Virus record (IMG/VR): IMGVR_UViG_3300023174_000033
Coordinates: 186,001-250,000 of that record
Length of the DNA: 64,000 bases
Strand: one strand, 5' to 3'
Shown: positions 8,240 through 36,634 of the stretch, piece by piece
How the letters are laid out: each line of letters starts with the position of its first letter
Position numbering within the stretch: position 1 is the stretch's first letter
Made by a program: the position numbers and the translations under genes
The notes under the pieces: generated by a model
The model's input: only the letters and a program-made list of their open reading frames with translations
Databases searched by the model: none
What the model was told of the DNA's origin: nothing

Positions 8240-8255
8240 TAAATAATTTTTGAAA

Positions 8256-11200: not shown

Positions 11201-12128
11201 GGGTAGTATATGGTATCATAATGATTTAGCAAGTGACTATAATGCTGACTTTATAAATGTCCCAACTTATAGTAATACAGCTATTTCTACAAATATAATA
11301 ATTGAACAATCCGGAACAGGATATTTACCAACAACACTATCAATAAATGGCGCAACACAAAATATTACATGGATTGGTGGTACACCATCGATGGGGACTC
11401 CAAATGTGACTGAAATTGTTGGTTTTTCATTCATAAACTATGATGGAACTTTTGTTGATATTTTAGGACAAGTATCTAATGGTCTAGTAGCTGGTGGTGG
11501 ATCTCCTGGTCCACAAGGAAATCAAGGTCCTAAAGGTAGTACTGGTAACCAAGGTAATACTGGTCCACAAGGTGTTCAAGGAGGTGCTGGGGGTGCTACT
11601 GGTAACCAAGGTAATACTGGTCCACAAGGTTTCCAAGGTAATCAAGGAGTTCAAGGTGTGACTGGCCCACAAGGTTTTCAAGGTCTGCAAGGTCCACAAG
11701 GTAATCAAGGAGTTCAAGGTGTGACTGGCCCACAAGGGTTTCAAGGTATGCAGGGTCCTTCGATATCACCCATTGTGGGAAGTTGGAGCTTATCCGCAGG
11801 TGGAAATACTGTTAGCTTTACAGTTACTGCGGGTCAATCATATGTTATGTGGGTAAATGGAAATATCCCAAATGGTATTGTTAATTGGAATGCGACAGTT
11901 ACACTATCAAACACAAACGTACCCGCGATAGGTGCACAGTATGGGTGGTATTATATTGCAGGAAATGCTTTGGTTTTAACATCAATACCAAGTCAGATAG
12001 TTGGAAGTCCGGGAAGTATCAGTACCGCATCACCACCGATTACAAATTCAAATACCTTTACGTTTGGTATAAATAATAACAGTGGTTCATCTAAAGTAAT
12101 ATATTACGGATACACTCAAGTGAGTTAA
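8256..12128 (+). CDS. Collagen-like (Gly-X-Y) tail fibre protein
   Basis: Several GPQG/GxTG triple-helix tracts, four copies of an H-x-x-G-x-YP-x-(I/V)Q domain and three P...(Y)xLG(S/T)...W fibre motifs. ATG 8256 is preferred over TTG 8250. Confidence 0.8.
10098..10199 (+). repeat. 18-bp tandem repeat encoding GPQG(R/S)T
   Basis: Five-plus copies of ggNccacaRggtagWact inside the collagen gene. Confidence 0.8.
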
Positions 12129-14781: not shown

Positions 14782-15657
14782 ATGTATTCAATCTTTCACT
14801 GTGAGGGTGGTATAGGCAAAAATATTTTAGCTACTGCAGTCGTATCATCACTCAAAAGCTCAGATCCTGACAGACAAATTATAGTTGTTTCTGCTTGGCC
14901 ACAAGTTTGGTTTAATAATCCTGATGTCCATCAGATTTACCCAATGGGTCAAGTTGCAAACTTCTATAAAAATTACGTAAAGGACAAAGATACTAAAGTC
15001 TATCGTCTTGAACCATACCACACAGAGGATTATATCCTCAACAAGAAACACTTAATTAAAATTTGGTGTGATTTACTTGGAGTGGATTGGAATGGTTCAG
15101 GACCTAGACTTTATTTTTCGCCCCTAGAACTAGAGTATATAAAAATAAAAATGCTGAATGGTGTTACTAAACCAATATTTTTATTACACACAAACGGTGG
15201 CGGTGGTCAAGGTCGACCATATTCTTGGTACAGGGATTTGCCAACACCAAATGCTTTAGATGTAGTTGAACACTTTAAAAGTGATTACCATATCTATCAC
15301 ATTGGTTATGAGGGTCAGCAAGTCTTAAATGGTTGCCATAAACTAACATTAGAAACAAGGGAAATATTAGCAGCTATCAATTTTTCACAAAAAAGACTTT
15401 TAATTGATTCATTCTCCCAACATGCCTCAGCAGCATTTGATTTAAAATCTGTTGTTTGTTGGGTTGGTAATGATTCATCAGTTCTTGGATATAATACAAA
15501 CGTGAATATCAAACCAAATATTGAACCTAAGTTTGATACATTACATTCATCTTATCTTGATGATTTTGATATTGGTGGTAATCCAGTTCAATTTCCTTAT
15601 GATAAATTAAGACTATTCGACTCAAATGAACTAATAAAAGAACTAAATAATTTATGA
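14782..15657 (+). CDS. GT-B glycosyltransferase, GT9/heptosyltransferase-like
   Basis: N-terminal GGIGK..(S)LK...PD..IIV...P..FNNP pattern, R(D)LP motif, and C-terminal IDSFSQHASAAF matching the GT9 DS..MHLAAA motif. Confidence 0.65.
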   Translation: MYSIFHCEGGIGKNILATAVVSSLKSSDPDRQIIVVSAWPQVWFNNPDVHQIYPMGQVANFYKNYVKDKDTKVYRLEPYHTEDYILNKKHLIKIWCDLLGVDWNGSGPRLYFSPLELEYIKIKMLNGVTKPIFLLHTNGGGGQGRPYSWYRDLPTPNALDVVEHFKSDYHIYHIGYEGQQVLNGCHKLTLETREILAAINFSQKRLLIDSFSQHASAAFDLKSVVCWVGNDSSVLGYNTNVNIKPNIEPKFDTLHSSYLDDFDIGGNPVQFPYDKLRLFDSNELIKELNNL

Positions 15658-16472
15658 GAAAAATCCATTACATATCTGGATTGCCAAGAAGTGGTTCAAC
15701 CCTTCTAACAAATATCCTTCTCCAAAACCCAAAAATCCAAACAACGGCAACTTCTTCTTTATTGGAGTTCATGTTGCAGGTCAGGGACAATTGGACAAAA
15801 CTAGAAGGACATACAGCACATCCAGATGGTCAAGATAAGTGGGCTGTTATTAAAAGTATTATGCAAACTTATCACAAAACAGATAAGGAAATTATTATTG
15901 ATAAAAACAGAGGATGGTCAAACCATATTGAGTTTGTTGAAAAGGTTACTGGTGAACCAGCGAGGATAATTGCTTGTGTTAGAAATCTTGAAGAAGTATG
16001 TGCTTCATTTGAAAAACTTTATAGGAAAAATAGAGCTAGTGGTGAAATTCATGGTGAGTTCTCAAACCCTAAAATGAAAACAATTGATGGTCGTGTATCT
16101 GTATGGACTTCTGACGAAGGCGTACTCGGTAGACCTTATGTATCTTTATTGGATACTGTTCAGAGAGGACTTGGTGATAGAATTTTATTCTTCCCATATG
16201 AGGAGTGGACAAATCAACCAAACAAATGGTTTAAAGCTCTTTATGATTTCCTTGGTGAAGAATATTATCAACATGACTTTGATAACATCGAACAAACTAT
16301 TAGGGAAAACGATGCTGGGTATGGTTGGGGATCTGATCTACATGAAATTAAAACTGGTAAGTTAAGACCAGCTGCATCTGAAGCTATTCAAGTAATTGGT
16401 AGAGATTGGTCTACAAAACTCCACAACACCGAGTTTTGGAAAAAGAAGAACGAAAAAAAGAGTATCATTTGA
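15654..16472 (+). CDS. PAPS-dependent sulfotransferase
   Basis: 5'-PSB loop SGLPRSGSTLL, DKNR, 3'-PB motif IACVRNLEEVCASF, YEE...P...LYDFLG. Overlaps the upstream GT (ATGA). Confidence 0.85.
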   Translation: MRKIHYISGLPRSGSTLLTNILLQNPKIQTTATSSLLEFMLQVRDNWTKLEGHTAHPDGQDKWAVIKSIMQTYHKTDKEIIIDKNRGWSNHIEFVEKVTGEPARIIACVRNLEEVCASFEKLYRKNRASGEIHGEFSNPKMKTIDGRVSVWTSDEGVLGRPYVSLLDTVQRGLGDRILFFPYEEWTNQPNKWFKALYDFLGEEYYQHDFDNIEQTIRENDAGYGWGSDLHEIKTGKLRPAASEAIQVIGRDWSTKLHNTEFWKKKNEKKSII

Positions 16473-16484
16473 TACTCTTTTTTT
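16453..16484. terminator. Bidirectional intrinsic terminator
   Basis: aaaaaaagagtatc-attt-gatactcttttttt between convergent genes. Confidence 0.8.
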
Positions 16485-16924
16485 TATCTACCAAGTTTAC
16501 CAAACTTAAACCACAATCTCTCATGGAAGAAATATAGTATCATTTTGGTTAGGACTTCTGTACCACCAATGGCCATTCCGATTTTCCAATCACCAGTGAT
16601 TAGCGCACTTAATATCATAGTATCAATAGTCCCAACGATTCTCCAAGTTATAGTTTTAGCTAGGTGTCTAGCTACAAAGTTATCAGGCTTCTTATAATCT
16701 ATATGAGCTACCCCATCTTTAATTGTCAGTACTCCTTTACAGGTAACATGCCATTTTTCACCAACACCTTCAATATAATCTTTGGTTGTTTTGGTCTCAG
16801 CATTGATAATAATATCAGATACTTGGATTTCTTCACCATCACGAAGTAATCTCCATCTGTTAGAATCATCAGTAGATACTGTGTTGTACCTAATTTGAAA
16901 TACTTGTTCTTTATTAGAGTTCAT
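16484..16924 (-). CDS. DUF2061-type membrane protein fused to an unknown N-terminal domain
   Basis: C-terminal RHLAKTITWRIVGTIDT...E..TK..LYFFHERLW is the DUF2061 pattern. Start moved to MNSNKEQ (16924) because the ORF-track start lies in the promoter region. Confidence 0.7.
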   Translation of the reverse strand: MNSNKEQVFQIRYNTVSTDDSNRWRLLRDGEEIQVSDIIINAETKTTKDYIEGVGEKWHVTCKGVLTIKDGVAHIDYKKPDNFVARHLAKTITWRIVGTIDTMILSALITGDWKIGMAIGGTEVLTKMILYFFHERLWFKFGKLGR

Positions 16925-16942
16925 AATTAATATATAAATCAT

Positions 16943-17827
16943 ATGAATAATGTTGTAATTTATTGTATAAAAAATATATTAACAGAAAAAGTTTACATTG
17001 GATCAGCGATTGATTACAAATCAAGATGGAGAAATCACAAGAACCAATTGAAGAATAATTTCCACCATAATATCAAATTACAAAATTCTTGGAATTTATA
17101 TGGTGATAATTCTTTTCTATTTGAAATATTAGAATATGTTGAAGATAAAAATATATTGATAGAAAGAGAACAATACTATTTAAACACAATATTATTTGCT
17201 TCAGAAAATGATGATAGATTTGATAAGTTGGGATATAATATATTGCGAGAAGCTGGAAATTCTATGGGTTATAGACATAGTACTGAAACTATTCTAAAAT
17301 TAAAAGGTGAAAATAATCCAATGTTTGGTAAATCTGTTTGGATTGGTAGGAACCACACTGAAGAATCAAAGGAATTAATATCTTTATCAAAGAAAGGTAA
17401 GTTAATAAAAAGTGATAACCACTTTTATAATAAAAATCATACTGATGAATCTAAAATAAAAATGTCCTTTAGTAGTAAAAGATTGTCTGGTTCTGATAAT
17501 CCAAATTTTGGTAAAGAATCCAAAAACAGAAAAATAGTAATACAACTTGATAAAAGTGGAAAAATAATAAAAGAGTGGTCACATGCTGGAGAAGCATCCA
17601 AAGCTTTGAGTATAAACTCACAGAATATAGGAGCTTGTTGTTTGGGTAAACAAAAAACTTATAAAGGTTTTATGTGGCAATATAAAATTGAAAAAGTAAA
17701 GAGTGACTCTGAAATCCAATTAGAAATTATATCATTGTATAACGAGACAAATATTACACAAAGAGAGATTTGTAAATTATACAAAATGTCTCCAAATAAA
17801 GTATCAAAACTATTAAAGACAACTTAA
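16943..17827 (+). mobile_element. Free-standing GIY-YIG homing endonuclease with NUMOD3/NUMOD1-like DNA-binding motifs
   Basis: VIYCIKN...KVYIGSA...RW..H...L...H.N..LQ.SW..YG...E..REQYYL...GYN, repeated H(T/S)xE(S/T)K..(I/M)S and NPMFGK motifs, and a C-terminal A.K.L.I....I..CC.GK.KTYKGF.W segment. Inserted antisense within the cysC operon. Confidence 0.85.
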
Positions 17828-17843
17828 GTTGTCTTTAATAGTT
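17808..17843. repeat. Perfect 36-bp palindrome at a convergent gene junction
   Basis: aactattaaagacaacttaagttgtctttaatagtt. Both flanking ORFs end in LLKTT* and share the central TTAA. Confidence 0.9.
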
Positions 17844-18243
17844 CTACTAAACTCTCATGTATTGATTCACTAACAAATTCTTTCCAAGAATCGTCATCAT
17901 TTCTAATTTTATACCTAATTTCCGTGGCTGAAATATTCGCAATATTTGAATCAACAATTATTTCTTCGACTCGATATCCCACGCCCCTTCCGTAATTAAC
18001 AGACGCAATATCTGGTATGATAATTATCTTAACCAATCCCCTTTCTATTTCATTTCCATATACTTTTTCCCAAAGTGATTTAACTTCTTCTGGTGTGAAT
18101 GGGTTTTTTTCATCTGTTGGTACATCTCGTATCATTATTAATACGGGTTCATTAATGTCCAAAAATTTAGAAAAAATTGTTTGATGTCCTTTGTGTGGAG
18201 TTTGGTACCTTCCTATAAATGCGTTGTATGGTTTTGTGTTCAT
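17824..18243 (-). CDS. HIGH/HxGH-family nucleotidylyltransferase (cytidylyltransferase-like); candidate minimal ATP sulfurylase
   Basis: FIGRYQTPHKGH, NPF, YGRGVGY and ISATEIR motifs. Overlaps the cysC stop codon. Confidence 0.7.
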   Translation of the reverse strand: MNTKPYNAFIGRYQTPHKGHQTIFSKFLDINEPVLIMIRDVPTDEKNPFTPEEVKSLWEKVYGNEIERGLVKIIIIPDIASVNYGRGVGYRVEEIIVDSNIANISATEIRYKIRNDDDSWKEFVSESIHESLVELLKTT

Positions 18244-18827
18244 TTTATATAATTTTTATTTTTTAGATATTGTATTAAAAAATCAACATTCTTTTCAATA
18301 TCTTCTTCTACATTATTTTCCAAATGGATAGCATTTTTTGGAATCTCAAATGGTGATGAAATACCCGTGAAATCTTTAATCTCACCAGCTCTTGCTTTTT
18401 TGTACAAACTTTTTGGATCTCTTGTCTCACAAGTCTCAAGTGATGCATCCACAAAAACCTCTGCAAATCTTTCACCAATAATTTCTTTTGATAATTGTCT
18501 ATTTGATTCAAAGGGTGAAATAAAAGAACAAATAACAATAAGTCCAGCATCATTCATAAGTTTACAAACTTCGGCGACTCTTCTTAGGTTTTCAATTCTA
18601 TCTTCATCTGAAAATCCAAGGTTTTTATTCAAACCAAGTCTTGTGTTATCACCATCCATTATGTAAGTGTGGTGACCCATTTCAAAGAGTTTTGATTCGA
18701 GTACATTTGCAATTGTGGATTTTCCAGAGCCAGAAAGGCCAGACATCCATATAGTGCAGGATTTTTGATTTTTCAAAGTTTCTCTGTCTACTTTGGATAC
18801 TTTGAAATCGTGCTTAGTTATATTCAT
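18240..18827 (-). CDS. cysC: Adenylyl-sulfate (APS) kinase
   Basis: IWMSGLSGSGKST P-loop, DGDN.R.GL..NLGFS.EDR.EN.RRVAEV, FISP, RDPK.LYKKARAGEIK.FTGISSPFE.P. Confidence 0.95.
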   Translation of the reverse strand: MNITKHDFKVSKVDRETLKNQKSCTIWMSGLSGSGKSTIANVLESKLFEMGHHTYIMDGDNTRLGLNKNLGFSDEDRIENLRRVAEVCKLMNDAGLIVICSFISPFESNRQLSKEIIGERFAEVFVDASLETCETRDPKSLYKKARAGEIKDFTGISSPFEIPKNAIHLENNVEEDIEKNVDFLIQYLKNKNYIK

Positions 18828-18914
18828 ACATAAAAGTATATTTAATTTGAATTTTTTGTTTAAAAATAAATTGGAGTTTTAATATATACGATAATAAAAC
18901 TATACTCATAAAAT

Positions 18915-21900
18915 ATGTCAACTTACAGTTTAACCCTTAGACAAGATGTGGGAAGGAAATTAACGATTCAAGAACTGGATCATAACTTTCTATATCTTGA
19001 AGATCTCACATCAGAAGGTGGTGGTTCAGTAAATTTACCAAAAGGATATGTGGTCATTGGTGGTGGTCTGACAGGATCAGCAACTGGATCAGAATCGTTC
19101 ACATTTGATAGTACAAAACAAAATATAATAGTTGGTTATAGCTCCAATATTACTGGAACTACATCGTATTCATCTATCGTGGGTGGTACGGATAACACAA
19201 TAGATTTATCTTCTAAATCTGGTATATTTTCTGGTGTTAGTGCTAAAATTTGTAATAATTCAGAAAGGTCTGTAATTATTGGTGGTTCACAAGATAAGAT
19301 TTTAGATTATTCTTGTAGGTCAACTGTTATTGGCGGTTTTAGAAACTGTATTACTGATTTTTCTTGTAATTCTTCTGTAATGGCTGGATGTTGTAATAAA
19401 GTTCAATGTAATTCTTGTAATTCATCTATTATGGGTGGATGTTGCAATACAATTTGTGATAATTCTTGTGCTTCAAGTATAGTAGGGGGATATAGAAACA
19501 CCATCTGTTACGAATCTGATTATTCATCAGTAATTGGTGGGTGTTGTAATAGAATCTGTGATTACTCTGACCACTCAGGTATATTCTCAGGTGGTTGGAA
19601 TAAGATACAATATTCTGACAAATCAGTTGTATTAGGTGGTAATAACAACCACATATGTATTTATTCTGATAGGTCTGGTGTTTTAGCTGGACGATGTAAT
19701 CAAATCATTGGTTTTTCTAATTATTCAACAATTGTGGGTGGATGTTGTAATGGAATAGCTTACTATTCTTGTTCATCAACCATCACTGGTGGTAGTTGTA
19801 ATTTTATTGTTGGTAGAATTGGTGGTCCATCTGCATCTTGTTATGGATCTTGTGATTCATCAATAATTGGTGGGTGTTGTAACCATATTTATGACCAATC
19901 TATGGCTTCTTCAATATTGGGTGGATGTTGTAATTCAATTACTTGTCAAACTTGTAATTCAAGTGTGTTAGGTGGTATATGTAACACAATTACTTGCCAA
20001 AGTTGTAACTCATCAGTTATTGGTGGGTGTTGTAATACTATTTACTATTCAAGTCAATCCACAATAGTTGGTGGTCAATGTAACCAAATCTGTGGATATT
20101 GGGATAGTAATTGTGAACCTAATTATAATTCAATCATTGGTGGTTGTAGAAACTGTATAGTTACTTCTGACTACGCTTCTATTATTGGTGGATATTGTAA
20201 TTGTATAATGGGATATGATGGTGATTACTCATCTATCATTGGTGGTGGTTATAATACCATTTGTTATAACTCACAACATTCTTCTATAGTTGGTGGGCAT
20301 TATAATACAATTTATACTTCTAACTTCTCATCTGTGATTGGTGGATGTTGTAACTGGATTTGTGACTATAGTTGCAGCTCAATAATTGCAGGTGGCCACT
20401 ATAACTACATTTTTAATTCTTGTTGTTCAGCAATGGTTGGTGGATATGAAAGTTGTATCTGTGACGAATCTTGTCTTTCAACTGTTATTGGGGGTTCTAG
20501 AAACTGTGTTATTGACAATTCTTGTGGATCATCTATTTTAGGCGGTAATTGTAATAGAATCTGCTGTTCTAATAATTCTGTAATTATTGGTGGTTCAAAC
20601 TTAACATTAGCTACTCAAAGTAACACAGTTTTAGTTCCCTATCTAAAAATTAATAATTTAGATCAGTGTAACGCTAATACGAAAATCCTAGTCGTTGATA
20701 GTCAAGGTAATGTAAATTACAGAACTGCTGAGTCTTTAGGTGGTGGTGCTTCTCTATATGGAATTAATAATATTTTGACTGATACTACATTTTCAAACAT
20801 ATTGGGTGGTAATGCAAATAGAATAACCTGTGTTTTTTCATCTTCAATATTAGGTGGTTATCAGAACTCTATTTGTTGTTATTCTGATAATTCAACAATA
20901 GTTGGTGGTTCTGCTAACCTAATCAGTGAAAATTCTGATTCTTCAACAATAGTTGGTGGTTATGAGAATTCTATTTGTTGTTTTTCATCCTATTCTTCAG
21001 TAATAGGTGGAGCCAATAACAGAATATGTGATAATTCTTGTCAATCAAGTATAGTAGGTGGTGGTTGTAATGTGATTTATTTTGATTCAGGGTATTCATC
21101 TGTGATTGGTGGGTGTTGTAATAGAATCTGTGATAATTCTTGTAATTCTGGTATATTCTCAGGTGGTTGGAATAAGATACAATATTCTAGTAAATCAGTT
21201 GTATTAGGTGGTAATAATAACCACATATGTTACTATTCAGATAGGTCTGGTATATTAGCTGGTCGTTGTAATCAAATTAAAGATTATTCTTATTATGCAT
21301 CAATCGTTGGTGGTAGATGTAATAAAATTTGTGGAAAGGAATGTCTTTGTGACCCAGGGTTCTTGTATGGTTCCTGTGAATCTACTATAATTGGTGGATG
21401 TTGTAACAGTATTTGCGATACATCTTTTAGGTCATCTATCTTAGGAGGGTCTTGTAACACAATCACTTGTCAAAGTTGTAATTCCACTATTATGGGTGGT
21501 TATGAAAATGATATTAAAGAAAGGTCTAAAAATAGTACCATAATTGGTGGTGGATGTAACACAATTGGTGTTTGTTACACAAATCCAGTTTGTAATTCAG
21601 CTATTATATCTAGTTATGGAAGCTGTATAGAAAACTATACTTGTAATTCAACTATACTAGGTGGTGCTAATAATAAAATTTCTGGTGACTATGTAGTTGG
21701 CCCAACTGGAGATAGATCTAATGGTGATACTGTAATAGGTGGATATCGTAATACAATATGTTATAATTCATGTTACTCATCAATTGTTGGTGGTAGATGT
21801 AACCTAATCTGTGATAATTCTGATTCTTCTTCAATTGTTGGTGGATGTTGTAATAGAGTTTATTGTTCTGATAATTCAACAATCACTGGTGGTTGTTTCA

Positions 21901-24371
21901 ATGTAATTGAACAAAACTCATTTAGATCAACAATATCTGGTGGTGATTGGAACTCAATCGAAAGTTGTTCTAATAAGTCTGGTATCTTTGCTGGTGCTGG
22001 TAACCACATCTGTGATTACTCACAGAGGTCAGTAATTGTTGGTGGACACTGTGCTAGAATAACACAAGATTCGTGTAGATCAACAGTATCTGGTGGTTTT
22101 AGAAACTGTATCAGAGTTGACTCTTGTGATTCAGCTATTGTTGGTGGATACTGTGGTCAAATCTGTGAATCTAGCTGCAAAGCAACTATTATTGGTGGTG
22201 AATGTAATGAAGTACTTTATAATTCAAACAACTCTTCAATAATTGGAGGTCGTTGTAATACCATCTACAGTGCTGTTAATTCAGCAATAGTTGGTGGTTG
22301 TAACTTATACTTAAGTACTTCTAACACTGTATTGGTTCCTAAATTGAGAATTAATAGTGTTATAAACTCACCATCTGATGATACAATCTTAACAAGAGAT
22401 AATTCAGGAAATGTAAACTTTAGGTCAGTTGCTTCATTACAACCAAGTTTTGGTGGTATAATTAATGGTGCTACTGAATCAATGACTGGTTTTATGAACC
22501 AGATTTGTAACTCAAATAACTCATCAGTTATTGGTGGTTCTTATAACTGTGTTTGTTGTTCTTCTAATCAATCATCAATAATTGGTGGTTACAGTAATGC
22601 AATTAATTTTTACTCAGTAAACTCAACAGTATTAGGTGGTACTGATAATAAAATTTGTTGTTCAGTCGTATCATCTATAATTGGTTCATATGTTTCTATT
22701 ATAACAAAATCAGTTGCTTCCAATATTATGGGTGGGGCTGGAAATCAAATACGTTGTTGTTCTAGTGGTTCATCCATTATTGGCGGACAAGGTAACGGTG
22801 TTTTATACTACTCTTGTGGTTCATCTGTAGTTGGTGGATGTTGTAATGCGGTAGTTTATGGGTCTAATGTATCATCAGTAATTGGTGGTTCTTGTAACAT
22901 AATCTATTCTAGTGACCATTCATCAATAGTAGGTGGTTCGTGTAATTGTGTTACTTACTGTTCTGATAGAAGTTCCATTTTAGGTGGATGTTGTAATAAA
23001 GTATGTAGCTATTCTTGTTACTCATCGATAATTGGTGGTGCGTGTAATCAAATTTGTGGAGCATTCTATGGTTATGGTTATGGTCCAGGAGGTTATCAAT
23101 ATGGTTCTTGTTATTCATCTATAGTAGGTGGAAAGTGTAATAGAGTAATGTTTGACTCAAGCTATTCATCTGTAATTGGTGGGTGTAGAAATGAAATTTG
23201 TACATACTCTGACAACTCATCAATTTTTGGTGGATGTAGTAACTACATAGGTTGTGAAGTTAATATGTCCTCAATAATTGGTGGATATGAAAACAATATC
23301 TACTGTCGTTCTTGTAGATCTACTATTGTTGGTGGATATAGTAATAACATATCATATGGTTCATGTGATTCAACTATAGTAGGTGGATATGATAACTACA
23401 CTACTTCTTACAGTAAATATTCAACTATAGTTGGTGGTTATAATAACTCTATTTGTGCATATTCTTGTAATACAACAATCTCAGGTGGTTGTGGAAATCA
23501 AATTTGTTCATACTCTTGCAACTCATCTATATTTGGTGGTAGTTGTAACTGTATCTGTGGTTGGAATGGACCTGGTCCAACGTTTGTTTTTGGATCTTGT
23601 AATTCTACTATTGTCGGTGGGTGTTGCAATAGAATTCAAAGAGATTCTAGTTTCTCAAGTATTATTGGTGGGTGTTGCAATACGGTTGATTATTACGCCG
23701 ATTTTTCAACAGTTATTGGGGGTTATAGAAATATAGTAAACGATGGTTCATGTTATTCATCTGTAATAGGTGGTTGTTGTAATAGAATCTGTTATAGTTC
23801 AGAACACTCCGGTATATTTGGTGGTGGTTGGAATAAAATTGAACGTTCAGACAAATCTGTTGTGTTGGGTGGTAATAATAACCACATATGCCAAAATTCT
23901 GAAAGGTCTGGCATCTTAGCTGGTCGTTCCAATCTAATTAAAGATTATTCTTGTTATGCATCAATCGTTGGTGGTTGTCGTAATAATGTTTGTTACTACT
24001 CTTGTTCTTCTGCTGTGATAAGTGGTTGTTGTAATATGATATGTGACTATAGTTATACTTCAACTATAATTGGCGGAGCTTGTAACTGTATTTGTAACTC
24101 TTGTTGTTCAACTATAATTGGTGGATGTTGTAATACAATAAATCAAGATACAAATAACTCAGTCATACTTGGTGGTGTTGGACTTTGTTTAACATCAAGC
24201 AATAGTAATACTGTTTATGTTCCAACACTTATGACTACTACTATTTCAAATGTGAACCCTGTTTCTTGGAAACTCGGTACAACAGCTTCTGGTTCAGTAA
24301 CTGTTGATACGACACAATATATTGAAGTTTCGATAAATGGTGTTATATACAAACTGGCAGTTGTTCAATAA
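18915..24371 (+). CDS. Very Cys-rich beta-helix/beta-roll fibre protein (about 15-aa S-S-I-I-G-G-C-C-N repeat)
   Basis: 1818 aa. N-terminal LRQ..GR.LT..ELD.NF.YL fibre anchor, then three long repeat blocks separated by NTV(L/Y)VP.L linkers. AATATATA at 18881..18888. Confidence 0.75.
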   Translation: MSTYSLTLRQDVGRKLTIQELDHNFLYLEDLTSEGGGSVNLPKGYVVIGGGLTGSATGSESFTFDSTKQNIIVGYSSNITGTTSYSSIVGGTDNTIDLSSKSGIFSGVSAKICNNSERSVIIGGSQDKILDYSCRSTVIGGFRNCITDFSCNSSVMAGCCNKVQCNSCNSSIMGGCCNTICDNSCASSIVGGYRNTICYESDYSSVIGGCCNRICDYSDHSGIFSGGWNKIQYSDKSVVLGGNNNHICIYSDRSGVLAGRCNQIIGFSNYSTIVGGCCNGIAYYSCSSTITGGSCNFIVGRIGGPSASCYGSCDSSIIGGCCNHIYDQSMASSILGGCCNSITCQTCNSSVLGGICNTITCQSCNSSVIGGCCNTIYYSSQSTIVGGQCNQICGYWDSNCEPNYNSIIGGCRNCIVTSDYASIIGGYCNCIMGYDGDYSSIIGGGYNTICYNSQHSSIVGGHYNTIYTSNFSSVIGGCCNWICDYSCSSIIAGGHYNYIFNSCCSAMVGGYESCICDESCLSTVIGGSRNCVIDNSCGSSILGGNCNRICCSNNSVIIGGSNLTLATQSNTVLVPYLKINNLDQCNANTKILVVDSQGNVNYRTAESLGGGASLYGINNILTDTTFSNILGGNANRITCVFSSSILGGYQNSICCYSDNSTIVGGSANLISENSDSSTIVGGYENSICCFSSYSSVIGGANNRICDNSCQSSIVGGGCNVIYFDSGYSSVIGGCCNRICDNSCNSGIFSGGWNKIQYSSKSVVLGGNNNHICYYSDRSGILAGRCNQIKDYSYYASIVGGRCNKICGKECLCDPGFLYGSCESTIIGGCCNSICDTSFRSSILGGSCNTITCQSCNSTIMGGYENDIKERSKNSTIIGGGCNTIGVCYTNPVCNSAIISSYGSCIENYTCNSTILGGANNKISGDYVVGPTGDRSNGDTVIGGYRNTICYNSCYSSIVGGRCNLICDNSDSSSIVGGCCNRVYCSDNSTITGGCFNVIEQNSFRSTISGGDWNSIESCSNKSGIFAGAGNHICDYSQRSVIVGGHCARITQDSCRSTVSGGFRNCIRVDSCDSAIVGGYCGQICESSCKATIIGGECNEVLYNSNNSSIIGGRCNTIYSAVNSAIVGGCNLYLSTSNTVLVPKLRINSVINSPSDDTILTRDNSGNVNFRSVASLQPSFGGIINGATESMTGFMNQICNSNNSSVIGGSYNCVCCSSNQSSIIGGYSNAINFYSVNSTVLGGTDNKICCSVVSSIIGSYVSIITKSVASNIMGGAGNQIRCCSSGSSIIGGQGNGVLYYSCGSSVVGGCCNAVVYGSNVSSVIGGSCNIIYSSDHSSIVGGSCNCVTYCSDRSSILGGCCNKVCSYSCYSSIIGGACNQICGAFYGYGYGPGGYQYGSCYSSIVGGKCNRVMFDSSYSSVIGGCRNEICTYSDNSSIFGGCSNYIGCEVNMSSIIGGYENNIYCRSCRSTIVGGYSNNISYGSCDSTIVGGYDNYTTSYSKYSTIVGGYNNSICAYSCNTTISGGCGNQICSYSCNSSIFGGSCNCICGWNGPGPTFVFGSCNSTIVGGCCNRIQRDSSFSSIIGGCCNTVDYYADFSTVIGGYRNIVNDGSCYSSVIGGCCNRICYSSEHSGIFGGGWNKIERSDKSVVLGGNNNHICQNSERSGILAGRSNLIKDYSCYASIVGGCRNNVCYYSCSSAVISGCCNMICDYSYTSTIIGGACNCICNSCCSTIIGGCCNTINQDTNNSVILGGVGLCLTSSNSNTVYVPTLMTTTISNVNPVSWKLGTTASGSVTVDTTQYIEVSINGVIYKLAVVQ

Positions 24372-24384
24372 AATTTGAATAAGT

Positions 24385-25326
24385 ATGATTATTAGTTACA
24401 GAGATTTCATAAAAGAATCATACGGTGGTTTTAAAACTATTGGTGAGTATATCGAAAATTTATCCAAAGATAATGATTATGCTTTGAATATAATTTCTCA
24501 ATATACACAGGACTTCGATCCAAAGGTTCGACTCGCTAATGTGGTTAATACCCTACCAAAGTCAACTCAAGATTTGATTTTGAAATTGATTATAGATGAG
24601 AAATCTGGAAAAGAGGAACCAAAAGATGCTGATGTTATCGCTTATACCAGTGTGAATCTAAATGAGTCCACGACAGTAGTTGGTGGCAAACAAGTATTGC
24701 AATGTTTCCTTAAAGTAATTACAGCTCTTGGTCAAAAGAGTATTTCTTACAATCCAGAGAACACACCAAAAGATTTTATATTTTATTTCGAGACTTCTTT
24801 ACTTCAAGTTGACGATGTGAAGTCGGTGATGAGTAGATATCAATTTTTTGATAAAGTAGTTAATGAAATTGATTATACTTTTAACTTCTGTAATTTATAT
24901 TACGGAATTAAAACTGATGGTAAATTTGAATACGGTATAAAGACGGAAACAGAGATGTTGATAATAGGTCAATTTGATTTGACAGTTGGTGTCTTGAAAT
25001 ATTTACTTTTATTGAATTCGCCTTCAGCTAATGGTTTGAAAAAACAAATAGCGACTCTAAATATGAATCAACTTAAATTACTTGGTAAAATTAAAAACTC
25101 AATGGGAGATTTCAATCCTGGAACTTTCCAAAAGAAAATGAAACCTGTAATTACTGATAATATTATATCATATTCATATCATGATGAAAATATAGATATT
25201 AATGAAATTGAAAACATAAAAAGCAATTTCAAATCCTTTCTTATCCCAAACAGATGGTCGGATAAGGTACAGGTAAGTGTGTCTATAAATGGTAATTATC
25301 TTTTTCTAAATATAAAGATTAAGTAA
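24385..25326 (+). CDS. Hypothetical protein with capsid-targeting-like leader
   Basis: N-terminus MIISYRDFIKE/S and an internal LNES site. Confidence 0.55.
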   Translation: MIISYRDFIKESYGGFKTIGEYIENLSKDNDYALNIISQYTQDFDPKVRLANVVNTLPKSTQDLILKLIIDEKSGKEEPKDADVIAYTSVNLNESTTVVGGKQVLQCFLKVITALGQKSISYNPENTPKDFIFYFETSLLQVDDVKSVMSRYQFFDKVVNEIDYTFNFCNLYYGIKTDGKFEYGIKTETEMLIIGQFDLTVGVLKYLLLLNSPSANGLKKQIATLNMNQLKLLGKIKNSMGDFNPGTFQKKMKPVITDNIISYSYHDENIDINEIENIKSNFKSFLIPNRWSDKVQVSVSINGNYLFLNIKIK

Positions 25327-25328
25327 TC

Positions 25329-27215
25329 TTAATATTTGAAATTCTTGAAAGATTTGAATCTGATAGATTCACCAACTGGCGTACTTCCTAAATTAACACG
25401 ACTCCAATCCATTATTGACTTCACCATCTCTGATTTGTGCTTTTCATCAATGATGTCTGAATTGGTAATATAAGTAATTATATCTCTGGTGAATACCTCA
25501 GGATCCTCCATAGATTTATCCTTCAATCTTTTTAATTGATCAAATATAAATAATACGGAATCAATTTTACCAGCGGCAGCCGCCCATTTTAAAGCCATCC
25601 ATCTTCTTTCAGTTACGATTGTTAATTGTTTTTGTTCAATTGACAATTTATCACCTGGCATGTTATCTGCATATTTAAGTAATAATTTCATTGATTCTAC
25701 ATCTCCCGCTTTCGAAGCTGCTCTGAAAGGATACCCCCTGTCAAAATTCGGGTCTAGACCAGCTTTCAAAAGATATTCAACAGCTTCTGTGTTAGTCGCT
25801 AGATTTCTAAAGACACTTGAATTTAGTGTGGCGCCATGAGAAACCAATAGTTTTACCATTTCCAAATCTTTAGCATATGACACTGCGGTGTCCGCACTAC
25901 TACCATCTGTAATGTTTGGCATTGCCCCCCTCTTTAAAAGGATACTCACAAGTTCTTTGTTATCAGACTTTACTGCATTTTTCAATGGTAATCCACCTCT
26001 TGAATTCGGATCAGCTCCATTTTCCAAGGCCTCTTGGGCTTCTTCAATAGTAATGTTTGTTTCAACAATTTTTCTTGATGCTAGAATCCTTTTTCTTTTT
26101 ATCTCTTGCTCCTCTTTTGACATAGGTCCAAAGACATCCATCGGTAAACCCCAGTCTTTTATTATAGTTTTAAATGAACTTTGAACACTAGCATCCAACT
26201 TGTCATGTGCTGCACTTATATCACCATTTGGTTTTATGGTCATTCCAATTACAGATCTGGAATTAGTTGGATCTAAATTGAAGTTATATACGTAGTATTG
26301 TTTATTGTATTCCTGTAAATAATTATCCCAATAACCCTGGCTTCTAGCAATACAATGAGAGGTGTGACCATTTAATTCTCTATTTGCGATATAAGTAAAT
26401 ACTTCTATCACTAAATATCCATCTTTATCATATACAATTTTTGCACCATTTTGAGGGCCAAATTTGGTATTTACTTCATCAATTTTCTGCATGAATTTAC
26501 TAAATTGGCCGTTGTTTAAAGATTTCAAATAATTTAAGGCATAATCAATAAGTTCATCCAACTTCTTAAAGTCTTTAAGTTTTGAATAGAAAACTCTTTG
26601 AAGAGATTTTTGTGACTTCTCATCAACTTTGCCACTTTCATCTCTCCCCATCTCACCAAAAGCTATACCGATTTCTCTAATCTTTTCCTTTTGTTGATTA
26701 ATTGCCTCATCAATCCATTTCTTTTGATTTGGTAATAATTCGTTATAGAATTTCTTATAAGATTTTTCAAGTAATAATTTATCAATATCATCTGAAATTC
26801 TTTCAGAAATCGGCCTTTGATCGTCATCAGTTGGTTTAATCGCTGCGTATCTATCCAATGCCATAGGTAAATCCTTGACCATAGTTCCTAGTGATTTTAC
26901 TCTGTCGAATAAACTTTGCAATTCAAGAAACTTTTCTTGATCTGAATAATCTTGATTTGGATCTAATTCTTCAAAAAATATTTTGGTAAAAAGAAAGGTA
27001 TATCCTGGCGCATCTTTACACAAATCTTTTATTTTTAAAAACTTTGGATTTGTTTCAGCTGCTCTTACCTCATCGGCGGATAAACTCACAGGTTGATCTG
27101 TCTCACCAGCTTCTGCTTTTTTCTTTTTAAATGCGAGATTTTTTAAATATACTTTAGCTTGTTGGACATTCTCATTTAAGCTATCTTTGAAATCAAAATA
27201 TTTTTTCTGTAACAT
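25329..27215 (-). CDS. Ankyrin-repeat protein with capsid-targeting-like motifs at both termini
   Basis: Ankyrin repeats (GADPN...PLKNAV...ELVSILLKRGA; EMVKLLVSHGA; YLLKAGLDPN...PFRAA). N-terminus KKYFDFKDSLNE, C-terminus GESIRFKSFKNF. Confidence 0.75.
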   Translation of the reverse strand: MLQKKYFDFKDSLNENVQQAKVYLKNLAFKKKKAEAGETDQPVSLSADEVRAAETNPKFLKIKDLCKDAPGYTFLFTKIFFEELDPNQDYSDQEKFLELQSLFDRVKSLGTMVKDLPMALDRYAAIKPTDDDQRPISERISDDIDKLLLEKSYKKFYNELLPNQKKWIDEAINQQKEKIREIGIAFGEMGRDESGKVDEKSQKSLQRVFYSKLKDFKKLDELIDYALNYLKSLNNGQFSKFMQKIDEVNTKFGPQNGAKIVYDKDGYLVIEVFTYIANRELNGHTSHCIARSQGYWDNYLQEYNKQYYVYNFNLDPTNSRSVIGMTIKPNGDISAAHDKLDASVQSSFKTIIKDWGLPMDVFGPMSKEEQEIKRKRILASRKIVETNITIEEAQEALENGADPNSRGGLPLKNAVKSDNKELVSILLKRGAMPNITDGSSADTAVSYAKDLEMVKLLVSHGATLNSSVFRNLATNTEAVEYLLKAGLDPNFDRGYPFRAASKAGDVESMKLLLKYADNMPGDKLSIEQKQLTIVTERRWMALKWAAAAGKIDSVLFIFDQLKRLKDKSMEDPEVFTRDIITYITNSDIIDEKHKSEMVKSIMDWSRVNLGSTPVGESIRFKSFKNFKY

Positions 27216-36202: not shown

Positions 36203-36412
36203 CCCCACAATGAGATTACTTGTGAGTAGTTAATTCGGTTTTCTTTCTTTCAATAAACCTGTGGGGCATCCCCCGTGAAATTAGTCAAACTACTTGGAGC
36301 CTCTGTTACCTAGCTTTATCCCAACGAGACTGGCGTTTAAGGATGTCCAGTCCAATACCCTACCCATTGTTTAAGTCTTGGATTAAAGACTCTGAGTATC
36401 TCTTACTCATTG
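36203..36412 (-). ncRNA. Structured ~210-nt RNA with predicted pseudoknots in the tRNA array
   Basis: GC-enriched, no ORF, at least seven complementary pairs, two of them crossing (see findings). Confidence 0.55.
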
Positions 36413-36483
36413 TTATCCGACAAGGATTCGAACCTCAACTAACTCCGTCAAAGGGAGGTGTGCTACCGCTACACTATCGGACA
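36413..36483 (-). tRNA. tRNA-Gln(UUG)
   Basis: Cloverleaf: acceptor UGUCCGA/UCGGAUA, D arm GUGU-AGCGGUA-GCAC, anticodon loop CU-UUG-AC, T arm UGAGG-UUCGAAU-CCUUG. CCA is not encoded. Confidence 0.92.
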
Positions 36484-36489
36484 ATTTAG

Positions 36490-36558
36490 TGGAGCGTCAT
36501 CTTTCGATTATCCACTTCTGTTACGTTACCCGAAGATAAGAGGCTTTACAGAGCTCCA
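36490..36558 (-). ncRNA. Small (69 nt) structured RNA between two tRNAs
   Basis: Terminal helix UGGAGC/GCUCCA, internal UCUGU/ACAGA, a cUUCGg hairpin and a GAAA-tetraloop hairpin. Confidence 0.5.
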
Positions 36559-36562
36559 TTTG

Positions 36563-36634
36563 TAGTCCCACGGGTAGTCGAAACCCGATTGCCAGGATGA
36601 AAACCTGGATTCCTAACCATTAGAAGATGGGACC
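36563..36634 (-). tRNA. tRNA-Glu(UUC)
   Basis: Acceptor GGUCCCA/UGGGACU, anticodon arm CCAGG-UU-UUC-AU-CCUGG, T arm CGGGU-UUCGACU-ACCCG. CCA is not encoded. Confidence 0.93.

What the first reader, a model, noticed from the sequence alone, without database searches (positions are those of the whole stretch)
18915..24371. 1818-aa fibre with an extreme cysteine load
Seen: on the order of 100 ~15-aa repeats S-(S/T)-(I/V)-(I/V/L)-GG-C-C-N-x-I-C-x-x-S-C, with roughly one residue in ten Cys (estimated by eye). Three solenoids end in NTV(L/Y)VP.L linkers (~20620, ~22325, ~24210). A ~60-aa block (YSSVIGGCCNRIC...GGWNKI...GGNNNHIC...) occurs three times (~19520, ~21090, ~23750). Cys falls at the variable positions of the repeat. 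It is divergently transcribed from cysC. Inference: disulfide ladders forming after lysis, a metal-binding surface, or acceptor sites (Ser/Cys) for the adjacent transferases.
Basis: partly seen in the sequence, partly recalled or inferred. Interest (0 to 1): 0.6.

Follow-up and report, generated by a model that had tools for sequence, protein, structure and literature searches.

The report
Cysteine-studded trimeric megaphage tail fibre
A 1818-residue tail fibre of a 465-kb lake-water phage is predicted to be a three-stranded beta-helix rod with about 500 cysteines per trimer, mostly on its outer surface, and it always sits beside a phage-encoded sulfation gene set, a pairing I found in no paper in the library searched.

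Summary
Window 18915-24371 (+) is one 1818-aa gene with 171 Cys (9.4%), against 1.0% for the phage's other ORFs. It has about 85-90 coils, three homologous solenoid modules, NTV.VP.L necks and a triplicated 62-aa block. One correction: the period is 17 residues, not 15.

It belongs to a large family of GGxxN-repeat beta-helix fibres (394 hits). Many relatives carry the trimer-chaperone domain Peptidase_S74. Models give a confident beta-helix (pLDDT 95) and support a homotrimer.

In the trimer model, repeat position 4 lines the axis and positions 8-15 are free of inter-chain contact. Most Cys (positions 8, 12, 13, 10, 16) are therefore outside the contacts, and C7 lies in the subunit seam.

Cys sites are not paired, not more conserved than average, and 41 of 85 coils hold an odd number. 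A regular disulfide ladder is therefore unlikely. High Cys density, rather than particular sites, is kept across relatives.

cysC serves sulfation, not cysteine synthesis. The module (ORF291, sulfotransferase, DUF2061, adenylyltransferase-like protein, APS kinase) abuts a Cys-rich fibre in every related megaphage, in at least four gene orders. A second sulfotransferase, unrelated by BLAST, flanks Cys-bearing fibres in smaller phages.

The chemistry is unresolved. Candidates are oxidative cross-bracing, sulfation or metal binding.

The parts
18915..24371 (+). Fibre gene, 1818 aa, 171 Cys (P0001)
   Evidence: 394 homologues
18915..19169 (+). N-terminal ~85 aa. The start motif (MSTYSL.LR...GRKLTI.E.D.NF.YL) is shared with orthologues and is the presumed attachment end.
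19170..20621 (+). Solenoid module 1 (aa 86-569), 17-aa coils
20622..20792 (+). Neck 1 (aa 570-626): NTVLVPYL, a beta-hairpin, then a Gly hinge. Lake populations show length variants (+2 or +3 codons) at 20738.
20793..22322 (+). Solenoid module 2 (aa 627-1136)
22323..22520 (+). Neck 2 (aa 1137-1202), starting NTVLVPKL
22521..24206 (+). Solenoid module 3 (aa 1203-1764). Residues 1564-1748 were modelled at pLDDT 95.3, and residues 1500-1818 as a trimer.
24207..24371 (+). C-terminal tip (aa 1765-1818, starting NTVYVPTL) plus the stop codon. It is densely inter-chain in the trimer model. The same tip type occurs in P0010 and in the L016 fibre, while most orthologues carry a different tip.
19521..19706 (+). 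62-aa conserved block, copy 1 (aa 203-264)
21093..21278 (+). 62-aa conserved block, copy 2 (aa 727-788)
23754..23939 (+). 62-aa conserved block, copy 3 (aa 1614-1675)
18828..18914 (.). 87-bp AT-rich divergent intergenic region between cysC and the fibre. It holds only weak promoter-like matches.
18240..18827 (-). APS kinase (cysC), the PAPS supply
   Evidence: Pfam PF01583, E 1.3e-63
17824..18243 (-). 139-aa adenylyltransferase-like protein (CTP_transf_like, NMNAT-like, below cut-offs). It is fused to the APS kinase in L021.
16943..17827 (+). GIY-YIG/NUMOD3 homing endonuclease lying inside the module. Relatives whose called genes were inspected have no gene at this point.
16484..16942 (-). DUF2061 protein, a module member
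15654..16472 (+). PAPS-type sulfotransferase (Sulfotransfer_3 and Sulfotransfer_1), the only one in the genome
14782..15657 (+). ORF291, a conserved module member. It may be GT9-like, but that is a lead only.
24385..25326 (+). ORF313, starting 13 bp after the fibre. It has no family assignment. It is 35-49% identical to ORFs that lie near the fibre in relatives.

Best explanation
SHOWN OR MODELLED
- The gene encodes a homotrimeric tail fibre of a roughly 465-kb freshwater megaphage.
- Each chain is a thin parallel beta-helix of 17-residue coils.
- The chain is built as three homologous modules joined by NTV.VP.L necks and Gly hinges.
- About 85-90 coils at the usual 4.8 A rise per beta-helix coil (textbook value, not measured on the model) give a rod of roughly 40-45 nm.
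- Ser1, Ile3, Asn9, Ile11 and Ser15 are invariant or nearly so. They are inferred to fill each chain's core.
- Position 4 (Ile/Val) lines the threefold axis. Positions 1, 2, 4-7 and 17 make the inter-chain contacts.
- Positions 8-15 make no inter-chain contact.
- Three quarters of the Cys in the modelled part lie outside those contacts. C7 sits in the seam between subunits.
- In total there are 171 Cys per chain, or 513 per trimer.

INFERRED
- What selection keeps is a high density of exposed thiols, not particular sites.
- The fibre folds with reduced thiols in the cytoplasm.
- After lysis into lake water, neighbouring thiols oxidise into an irregular, short-range net of disulfides along and between coils, and possibly across the seams. 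This net stiffens the rod and protects it.
- By a crude lattice count, 88% of Cys have another Cys within one coil and two positions.
- The adjacent PAPS-sulfation module probably acts on the same fibre, either on the protein or on a sugar attached to it. It may cap or charge this surface.
- The two ideas are compatible.
For: FAMILY AND FOLD
- 394 homologues, many carrying Peptidase_S74 or named tail fibre.
- AF2 monomer models: the solenoid part at pLDDT about 90 and a 185-aa piece at 95.3.
- Structure matches to beta-helix tailspikes and adhesins at Z 13-16, rmsd 2.3-3.1 A.

TRIMER
- Score 0.89; best of 3 controls 0.00.
- That mark was reached by 21 of 30 proteins solved as pairs of one chain and by 0 of 23 solved as single chains. 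The calibration used two copies, not three.
- The runs share at least 95% of their contacts, and partner pLDDT is at least 83.

INTERFACE BY REPEAT POSITION
- Positions 1, 2, 4, 5, 6 and 7 touch in 14 of 14 coils, and position 17 in 11 of 12.
- Positions 3 and 8-15 touch in 0 of 14.
- 25 of 33 Cys lie outside the contacts.

SELECTION FOR DENSITY
- Genome background is 1.0% Cys.
- Eleven close relatives listed by the homologue search (P0002-P0012) have 3.6-6.1% Cys, and fibres beside the module reach 8.2%.
- In six orthologues aligned in full, individual Cys are only 40-46% conserved at 42-51% overall identity.
- Cys-free family members sit in bacterial chromosomal contexts.

NETWORK FEASIBILITY
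- 51% of Cys have a Cys stacked directly above or below.
- 88% have a Cys within one coil and two positions, against a null of 128.5 +/- 4.5 of 156.

LINK TO THE MODULE
- The fibre abuts the module in every related locus, in at least four gene orders.
- A sulfotransferase unrelated by BLAST lies next to GGxxN fibres with 2.0-4.4% Cys in all 7 loci that have upstream sequence.

HABITAT
- Lake water and freshwater metagenomes.
Against: - No coordinates could be read, so no S-S distances were measured. Exposure rests on interface lists and conservation patterns only.
- No pair of positions is coupled in this protein beyond a weak C7-C8 signal (p = 0.003 over 40 tests).
- Stacks of even length are not enriched, and 41 of 85 coils hold an odd number of Cys. 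Many thiols would therefore stay unpaired.
- The genome encodes no DsbA. The Erv1 search was uninformative because its control also failed.
- Free surface thiols could also make virions clump.
- The oxygen state of the source water is unknown.
- The link to the module is by gene neighbourhood only. Four Cys-rich relatives on contigs of 8-20 kb show no module in view.
Confidence: 0.4

Rival explanations
1. The fibre is the substrate of the adjacent module. The APS kinase, perhaps with the small adjacent adenylyltransferase-like protein, makes PAPS. The sulfotransferase then sulfates exposed residues of the coil (Tyr, Ser or Cys) or a sugar added by ORF291. This gives a polyanionic surface. Cys is either an acceptor or is capped this way. 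This reading is not exclusive of oxidative bracing.
For: - The module abuts a fibre with 4.1-8.2% Cys in every related megaphage locus, in at least four gene orders.
- A second sulfotransferase lineage shows no BLASTP similarity to ours (E 0.69). It lies next to fibre homologues with 2.0-4.4% Cys in 7 of 7 informative loci of 17-116-kb phage contigs.
- The genome has no PAPS reductase and no ATP sulfurylase, so cysC is not there for Cys synthesis.
- Tyr shares the exposed positions 7, 13, 14 and 17. DY pairs number 12, against 4.0 +/- 1.9 in shuffles.
- The nearest solved sulfotransferases include TPST1/2, though only at E 0.07-0.15.
- Precedent for a hyper-modified beta-helix: TibA heptosylated on Ser by TibC (PMC4358343). 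The TibA fold matches at Z 14.1, rmsd 3.1 A.
Against: - No sulfotransferase acting on protein Cys is known to me.
- The acceptor could equally be a host or phage glycan.
- The GT9 assignment of ORF291 failed every alignment-based test.
- Four Cys-rich relatives show no module in the 8-20 kb in view.
- The related megaphage loci are kin, so they are not independent observations.
Confidence: 0.3
2. The exposed thiolates form a metal-binding surface for Zn, Fe or Cu. This would serve stability or contact with a host receptor, by analogy with the His-bound iron sites of the T4 long tail fibre tip.
For: - Motif counts: 26 CC, 31 C...C and 9 C.C.
- CC-over-CC stacks give four-Cys clusters in several places.
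- In orthologues, Cys exchanges mostly with Tyr, Asp, Asn and Ser, which are also metal ligands.
Against: - The arrangement is irregular, with no recurring three- or four-Cys site.
- No metal-site family matched.
- There is no comparative or structural support.
Confidence: 0.12
3. There is no specific thiol function. Cys is merely tolerated at unconstrained surface positions of a protein that folds in the reducing cytoplasm, and it drifts there by single-base steps (TGT from TAT, AGT, GGT).
For: - Cys sites turn over as fast as other residues and swap with Tyr, Ser, Gly, Asp and Asn.
- 161 of 171 Cys codons are TGT.
- Cys occupancy at the different positions is nearly independent.
Against: - 30-48% Cys at four positions contrasts with 1.0% genome-wide.
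- The phage's other large ORFs (900 aa or more), apart from the paralogue, have 0-0.7% Cys.
- In Cys-poor relatives the same positions are filled mainly by Gly, Asn, Ser and Asp.
- High density is kept across orthologues that are only 42-51% identical, and it recurs in other phage lineages.
Confidence: 0.1

Closest known systems
Phage and bacterial 'tail fiber domain-containing' proteins with GGxxN beta-helix repeats, many ending in the Peptidase_S74 intramolecular chaperone
   Same: Significant homology (E down to 1e-127), 16-18-residue GGxxN coils, and a trimer. The second sulfotransferase-linked group ends in what reads as an S74-like tail (by eye, not scanned against Pfam).
   Different: This protein has no S74 domain. 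It has three tandem modules and 9.4% Cys, against 0-7.3% in the 120 relatives listed. It also has a linked sulfation module.
Right-handed parallel beta-helix tailspikes and autotransporter passengers (AlgE4 A-module 2pyg, TibA 4q1q, Ag43 7kob, phage tailspikes)
   Same: Best structural superpositions: Z 13-16 at rmsd 2.3-3.3 A. An Asn ladder sits before the third strand. Three helices pack side by side in the trimer model.
   Different: The coil is much thinner at 17 residues. There are no catalytic loops and no sequence similarity (3-12% identity). The Z scores form a plateau typical of repeat folds, so this shows the fold class only.
Trimeric autotransporter adhesin heads (YadA, UspA1, BpaC) and the ryegrass antifreeze beta-roll (LbR_Ice_bind)
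   Same: Similar repeat wording (S.I.GG..N.I). These give the highest sequence identity among the structure hits (15-24%). Relatives P0064 and P0070 hit PF21300. Atlas neighbours carry UspA1_rep, YadA_head and LbR_Ice_bind. TAA heads are trimers.
   Different: No Pfam hit for this protein (UspA1_rep E 0.28). The period is 17 rather than 14-15 (the family periods are recalled from the literature, not measured here). Superposition is poor at rmsd 8.1-8.4 A. There is no membrane anchor.
Disulfide-braced insect antifreeze beta-helices (Tenebrio type) and Cys-rich surface coats such as Giardia VSPs
   Same: A Cys-rich extracellular repeat protein on a beta-helix scaffold. This comparison is from my own recall of the literature.
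   Different: Those proteins have fixed, conserved Cys pairs in each repeat. Here there are none, and the Cys lie outside the core rather than inside it.
TibC/TibA and AAH/AIDA-I: a beta-helix adhesin hyper-heptosylated on Ser by a GT9-like enzyme (PMC4358343)
   Same: A repeat beta-helix encoded next to a dedicated modifying enzyme. TibA is among the best fold matches. ORF291 resembles viral clusters that carry Glyco_transf_9.
   Different: The GT9 membership of ORF291 is unproven. Here the clear enzymes are a sulfotransferase and an APS kinase. The client is a phage fibre, not an autotransporter.

Membership tests
GGxxN-repeat tail-fibre family (homologues) | Significant sequence homology over the repeat region | tested here: met
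   394 proteins at E <= 1e-3; best hit 3.4e-127 at 40% identity
GGxxN-repeat tail-fibre family (homologues) | 16-18-residue coil with conserved GG..N | tested here: met
   Spacing of 17 in 44-56 cases and 16 in 13-14 cases. The same spacing modes occur in relatives.
GGxxN-repeat tail-fibre family (homologues) | C-terminal Peptidase_S74 chaperone | tested here: not met
   No Pfam hit in the whole protein or in the C-terminal piece. The domain is present in P0026, P0047 and P0070. It is not universal in the family.
GGxxN-repeat tail-fibre family (homologues) | Homotrimer | tested here: met
   Model only. Score 0.89 against best control 0.00. The mark was reached by 21 of 30 solved one-chain pairs and 0 of 23 single chains. 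At least 95% of contacts are shared between runs, and pLDDT is at least 83.
GGxxN-repeat tail-fibre family (homologues) | Presence in the virion | not testable with these tools
   Supported only by context: a collagen-like tail fibre (phrog_819) and a Laminin_G_3 virion protein lie upstream.
Trimeric autotransporter adhesin head (YadA_head / Hep_Hag) | Match to the family profiles | tested here: not met
   No hit. UspA1_rep scores E 0.28 on one piece.
Trimeric autotransporter adhesin head (YadA_head / Hep_Hag) | Left-handed beta-roll of 14-15-residue turns | tested here: inconclusive
   The period here is 17. UspA1 and BpaC heads give Z 11.5-11.8 but rmsd 8.1-8.4 A. Handedness could not be read from the model.
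Trimeric autotransporter adhesin head (YadA_head / Hep_Hag) | C-terminal membrane anchor and stalk | tested here: not met
   Pfam finds no domain. The C-terminus is a 54-aa tip.
Grass antifreeze beta-roll (PF21300 LbR_Ice_bind) | Profile match | tested here: not met
   None in P0001. Relatives P0064 and P0070 match at E 5e-7 and 4e-8.
Disulfide-braced beta-helix (insect antifreeze type) | Fixed Cys pair in every coil, conserved across relatives | tested here: not met
   No coupled pairs. Coils with an odd Cys count: 41 of 85. Cys conservation is 40-46%, about equal to overall identity.
Right-handed parallel beta-helix (tailspike / pectate-lyase-like class) | Three short strands per coil, with an Asn ladder at the turn before the third strand | tested here: met
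   DSSP gives strands at positions 2-4, 7 and 10-12. N9 is 93-95% conserved. Superpositions give Z 13-16, rmsd 2.3-3.1 A. This shows fold class only.
PAPS sulfation pathway (the neighbouring module) | APS kinase and a PAPS-dependent sulfotransferase | tested here: met
   PF01583, E 1.3e-63; PF13469, E 2.9e-15; PF00685, E 6.3e-11
PAPS sulfation pathway (the neighbouring module) | ATP sulfurylase to make APS | tested here: not met
   PF01747 is absent from the genome, and the search's control genomes responded. The 139-aa adenylyltransferase-like protein is an untested candidate.
PAPS sulfation pathway (the neighbouring module) | The fibre is the acceptor | not testable with these tools
   Gene neighbourhood only
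GT9 heptosyltransferase (ORF291) | Profile or structural match to Glyco_transf_9 | tested here: inconclusive
   Atlas feature score 0.98, with 213 shared features, to viral clusters in which 45% of members carry PF01075. No Pfam hit. No PDB profile hit. hhalign against WaaC/F/Q/U gives probability 2%, E 0.024, over 51 N-terminal columns.

The most novel reading that the evidence does not exclude
A phage makes its own PAPS and sulfates its own tail fibre, either on exposed Tyr, Ser or Cys or on a sugar added by ORF291. The thiol-rich beta-helix surface would then be a purpose-built acceptor or redox-switchable face. In the boldest form, Cys is capped as S-sulfocysteine, which keeps about 500 thiols per fibre from cross-linking until the fibre meets a reducing surface. 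My paper searches found no description of virion-protein sulfation in phages.
Probability: 0.25. Interest if true: 0.8.

Novelty: new variant of a known kind. Interest (0 to 1): 0.55.

Why it matters
Tail fibres decide host range and must survive outside the cell. This fibre family is very common in lake-water metagenomes. Its megaphage branch has pushed exposed cysteine to 5-9%, and it keeps a five-gene sulfation set beside the fibre.

If the thiols cross-link, this would be a simple chemical way to harden a long fibre after release. If the fibre is sulfated, it would be the first phage-encoded sulfation of a virion protein that I could find. It would also reassign a 'sulfur-metabolism auxiliary gene' (cysC) to virion chemistry.

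That reassignment bears on how viral cysC genes are read in metagenome surveys. Here cysC comes with a sulfotransferase and without PAPS reductase. More distant phage cysC genes have no homologue of this sulfotransferase, and all but one (L035) no such fibre, within the flanks fetched.

Tried and rejected
SEARCHES ON THE FIBRE THAT FOUND NOTHING
- Pfam, PHROGs and NCBIfam, on the whole protein and on seven pieces.
- PDB by sequence.
- tblastn and megablast against INPHARED.
- IMG/VR pattern scans with P0001, P0021 and P0017.

STRUCTURE SEARCHES
- Foldseek with the 627-aa model gave only long, poor beta-helix matches.
- The atlas shape search gave nothing useful.

IDEAS REJECTED
- cysC feeds the fibre's cysteine demand. 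Rejected: the genome has no PAPS reductase and no ATP sulfurylase, and a sulfotransferase lies in the same module.
- A regular stacked or intra-coil disulfide ladder. Rejected by the pair, run-length and parity counts.
- Inter-chain C17-C7 disulfides. In relatives these two never co-occur (0 of 23).

IDEAS LEFT OPEN
- A dedicated phage oxidase. No DsbA was found. The Erv1 search was uninformative because its control also found nothing. The genome does have a thioredoxin.
- Diversity-generating mutagenesis as the source of the C/Y/S/N/D/G pattern. This was considered from the codon table. No test for a reverse transcriptase or template repeat was run, and the pattern spans 5.4 kb rather than a short variable region, so I dropped it untested.
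- ORF291 as a GT9 enzyme. Tested four ways without confirmation.
- The sulfotransferase as a TPST. Only the PAPS-binding loop matches, at E 0.07-0.15.
Full report
WHAT IS THERE

Window 18915-24371 (+) is a single open frame of 1818 codons. The window is bases 186001-250000 of a 464,605-bp virus record rated 98% complete, so this is a megaphage.

The product has 16.2% Ser, 13.7% Gly, 10.9% Ile, 10.0% Asn and 9.4% Cys, which is 171 residues. Across 416 non-overlapping ORFs of the same genome, Cys is 1.0% overall with a median of 0.88%. This protein is the extreme outlier. The only other large Cys-rich ORF is a 594-aa paralogue with the same repeat (5.05% Cys, outside the window). The phage's other large ORFs (900 aa or more) have 0-0.7% Cys.

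THE REPEAT

The period is 17 residues, occasionally 16, and not about 15. A strict pattern finds 83-85 coils, and about 90 fit the solenoid length.
- Conserved positions are S1, S/T2, I3, I/V/L4, G5, G6, N9, I11 and S15.
- Cys occupies position 8 (48% of coils), 12 (40%), 16 (33%), 7 (28%), 13 (18%) and 10 (12%). It never occupies a conserved position.
- Tyr shares positions 7, 13, 14 and 17.

The three solenoids align end to end at 36-46% identity, so the gene is an internal triplication of a module of roughly 550-600 aa. At the DNA level only short 51-bp arrays of 2-2.5 copies survive. The periodicity is therefore old and held at the protein level.

FAMILY

Family libraries and the PDB sequence search are blank for this protein. 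The word-indexed protein search, however, finds 394 relatives in its length band.
- The closest (P0002-P0012, 32-45% identity) are unnamed metagenome proteins.
- Further out, many carry the Peptidase_S74 intramolecular chaperone of trimeric fibres. Some carry the grass-antifreeze beta-roll profile.
- The few source names are 'tail fiber domain-containing', 'beta strand repeat-containing' and 'trimeric autotransporter adhesin'.

Among the 120 listed, Cys ranges from 0 to 7.3%, so ours is the highest. Fibres beside the module in two IMG/VR megaphage contigs reach 8.2% and 7.8%. Three Cys-free members that I located sit among housekeeping genes of bacterial contigs. They therefore appear to be bacterial proteins, not phage ones.

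FOLD AND ASSEMBLY

AlphaFold2 on module 2, with a 13-row alignment, gives a solenoid at pLDDT about 90 with disordered insertions and necks. A 185-aa piece with a 25-row alignment gives pLDDT 95.3 and pTM 0.89. DSSP shows three short strands per coil, at positions 2-4, 7 and 10-12, with the Asn ladder just before the third strand.

Structure searches return a plateau of beta-helix proteins at Z 13-16 and rmsd 2.3-3.1 A. These include tailspikes, alginate epimerase, TibA, Ag43 and a bacterial antifreeze. The TAA heads and the ryegrass antifreeze show the highest sequence identity (15-24%) but superpose poorly at rmsd 8.1-8.4 A. This fixes the fold class only.

A three-copy model of residues 1500-1818 supports a homotrimer.
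- The score is 0.89 and the best of 3 controls is 0.00.
- That mark was reached by 21 of 30 proteins solved as pairs of one chain and by 0 of 23 solved as single chains. The calibration used two copies.
- The runs share at least 95% of their contacts, and partner pLDDT is at least 83.

I mapped the listed contacts onto the repeat.
- Positions 1, 2, 4, 5, 6 and 7 touch a neighbouring chain in all 14 coils, and position 17 in 11 of 12.
- Positions 3 and 8-15 never touch.
- Position 4 meets its own copies across chains, so it lines the axis.
- Of the 33 Cys in that stretch, 25 lie outside the contacts. The other 8, mostly C7, lie in the seam.

Positions 3, 9, 11 and 15 are invariant, so they are presumably core. 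That leaves C8, C10, C12, C13 and C16 on the outer surface by inference. I could not read coordinates, so I measured no distances.

WHAT THE CYS PATTERN SAYS

Three counts argue against a designed disulfide ladder.
- In this protein, Cys occupancy at different positions is nearly independent. Only C7-C8 co-occur weakly (p = 0.003 over 40 tests).
- Stacks of Cys at one position in successive coils show no excess of even lengths. Forty-one of 85 coils hold an odd number of Cys.
- Against six orthologues of 42-51% identity, only 40-46% of our Cys are matched by Cys. The rest face Tyr, Asp, Asn, Ser, Gly or Thr.

Cys is thus no better conserved than an average residue, unlike structural disulfides. 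Yet the density is kept throughout the clade, and it recurs in other phage lineages at the same non-core positions. In Cys-poor relatives the same positions hold Gly, Asn, Ser and Asp.

The trait under selection therefore looks like a thiol-rich surface rather than particular bonds. The array is dense: 51% of Cys have a Cys directly above or below, and 88% have one within one coil and two positions. An irregular oxidative net is therefore conceivable.

THE NEIGHBOURS

Upstream lie a collagen-like tail fibre and a Laminin_G_3 virion protein. A module follows, in this order:
- ORF291 (no family assignment);
- a sulfotransferase (PF13469, E 2.9e-15);
- a DUF2061 protein on the minus strand;
- a GIY-YIG homing endonuclease;
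- a 139-aa adenylyltransferase-like protein on the minus strand;
- the APS kinase on the minus strand (PF01583, E 1.3e-63), 87 bp from the fibre start.

The genome has no PAPS reductase, no ATP sulfurylase and only this one sulfotransferase. cysC here therefore points to sulfation, not to cysteine synthesis.

CO-OCCURRENCE

Every locus I could fetch that carries the module at 70-79% identity also carries an abutting GGxxN fibre with 4.1-8.2% Cys. These loci come from ENA, JGI and IMG/VR contigs of 47-643 kb. The gene order differs among them:
- divergent, as in this window;
- fibre on the opposite strand with the whole module co-directional (L018);
- module followed by the fibre (L016);
- fibre followed by the module, with the transferases inverted (L013).

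Phage APS kinases at only 40-47% identity have no homologue of this sulfotransferase (BLASTP, E <= 1e-4) within the flanks fetched. All but one have no such fibre there either. The exception is L035, with a 1.1%-Cys fibre about 2 kb from its kinase.

A more distant homologue, P0113 (4.4% Cys), is followed directly by a sulfotransferase with no BLASTP similarity to ours (E 0.69). Relatives of that second enzyme in IMG/VR contigs of 24-116 kb have a GGxxN fibre with 2.0-4.4% Cys just upstream. This holds in all seven loci where upstream sequence exists.

Two separate sulfotransferase lineages therefore sit next to Cys-bearing members of this fibre family. On the other side, four Cys-rich relatives on contigs of 8-20 kb show no module in view.

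ORF291

ORF291 is at least 70% identical to more than 100 metagenome proteins. A language-model search places it next to viral clusters in which 45% of members carry Glyco_transf_9. Three alignment-based tests gave no confirmation:
- Pfam;
- a profile search of the PDB;
- a profile-profile comparison with E. coli WaaC/F/Q/U, which gave probability 2% and E 0.024 over the N-terminal 51 columns only.

It stays a lead.

HABITAT

The gene's words occur in lake-water and freshwater metagenomes. Twenty listed runs from 13 studies hold at least part of it. Three runs from two studies hold almost all of it, and two of those three may be the source sample.

Laid contigs show an identical copy in another sample. 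They also show diverged, rearranged variants elsewhere, including length variants of the Gly hinge at 20738. No RNA run is on record.

HOW IT MOST LIKELY WORKS

Shown or modelled: a trimeric beta-helix rod in three modules, with its Cys mostly on the outside.

Inferred: the fibre folds with reduced thiols in the cytoplasm. Once released into lake water, neighbouring thiols oxidise into an irregular net that stiffens and protects the rod (my leading reading, about 0.4).

The chief rival, which is compatible with the first, is that the fibre is the client of the sulfation module (about 0.3). The gene-neighbourhood evidence for that link is the firmest comparative result here, but the acceptor residue is unknown. 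Metal binding (about 0.12) and mere tolerance of Cys (about 0.1) are weaker.

COMPARISON AND NOVELTY

The protein is a member of the GGxxN-repeat fibre family by homology, but it lacks the S74 tail. It works like a slim tailspike-type trimer. It is not a TAA head by profile or period, and not a disulfide-braced antifreeze-type helix.

Seven paper searches were run. None of the Cys-rich-fibre or sulfation queries turned up a paper on a Cys-rich phage fibre or a phage sulfation module beside a fibre. Two further searches were for precedents on virion glycosylation and the TibA/BAHT system.

I rate it a new variant of a known kind.

Noticed in passing
window 16943-17827 (+): A GIY-YIG/NUMOD3 homing endonuclease sits inside the sulfation module, between the DUF2061 gene and the adenylyltransferase-like gene. 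In relatives whose called genes were inspected (L008, L009, L011, L013), those genes are adjacent with no endonuclease between them.
   Followed up: partly
window 17824-18243 (-); L021:9986-11056: A 139-aa NMNAT-like adenylyltransferase (all hits below family cut-offs) always travels with the APS kinase. In L021 the two are fused into one 357-aa ORF. The phage has no ATP sulfurylase, so this could be a minimal sulfate adenylyltransferase or a sugar-nucleotide enzyme. Its substrate is unknown.
   Followed up: partly
window 14782-15657 (+): ORF291 has no family assignment but is remarkably conserved. The best 120 of its 425 metagenome hits are all 70-89% identical. That is far more conserved than the fibre next to it.
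   Followed up: partly
G000:C1:26753-28537 (-), outside the window (L002-L007): A 594-aa paralogue with the same 17-aa repeat and 5.05% Cys lies about 176 kb away from the main fibre. It is the only other large Cys-rich ORF in the genome. Only the sizes and Cys content of its neighbouring ORFs were listed.
   Followed up: partly
window 20738: Lake populations carry insertions of 6 or 9 bases (extra Gly codons) in the Gly hinge after neck 1. Many contigs join distant repeats of the gene. This suggests fibres of different coil number coexist.
   Followed up: no
window 24207-24368; L016:10885-13389; P0010: The 54-aa C-terminal tip is shared with only a few relatives. Most orthologues that share the N-terminus end in a different domain (ending ...GQMGTFA). 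This looks like tip swapping between fibres.
   Followed up: partly
L050, L051 and the contig of P0047: Cys-free family members with S74 tails lie among housekeeping genes of bacterial contigs. One lies beside a gene with a Por_Secre_tail signal. The family is therefore shared between bacterial surface proteins (0% Cys) and phage fibres (2-9% Cys).
   Followed up: partly
window 8250-12128 (+) and 12150-14423 (+): A 1292-aa collagen-like tail fibre with 0.0% Cys and a 757-aa Laminin_G_3 / F5_F8-type-C lectin-like protein precede the module. The same order is kept in relatives.
   Followed up: partly
window 36412-36634 (-): tRNA-Gln(TTG) and tRNA-Glu(TTC) genes
   Followed up: no
window 25329-27215 (-): A 628-aa ORF with weak ankyrin-repeat-like matches to Legionella Ank effectors. 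All hits are far below cut-off.
   Followed up: no
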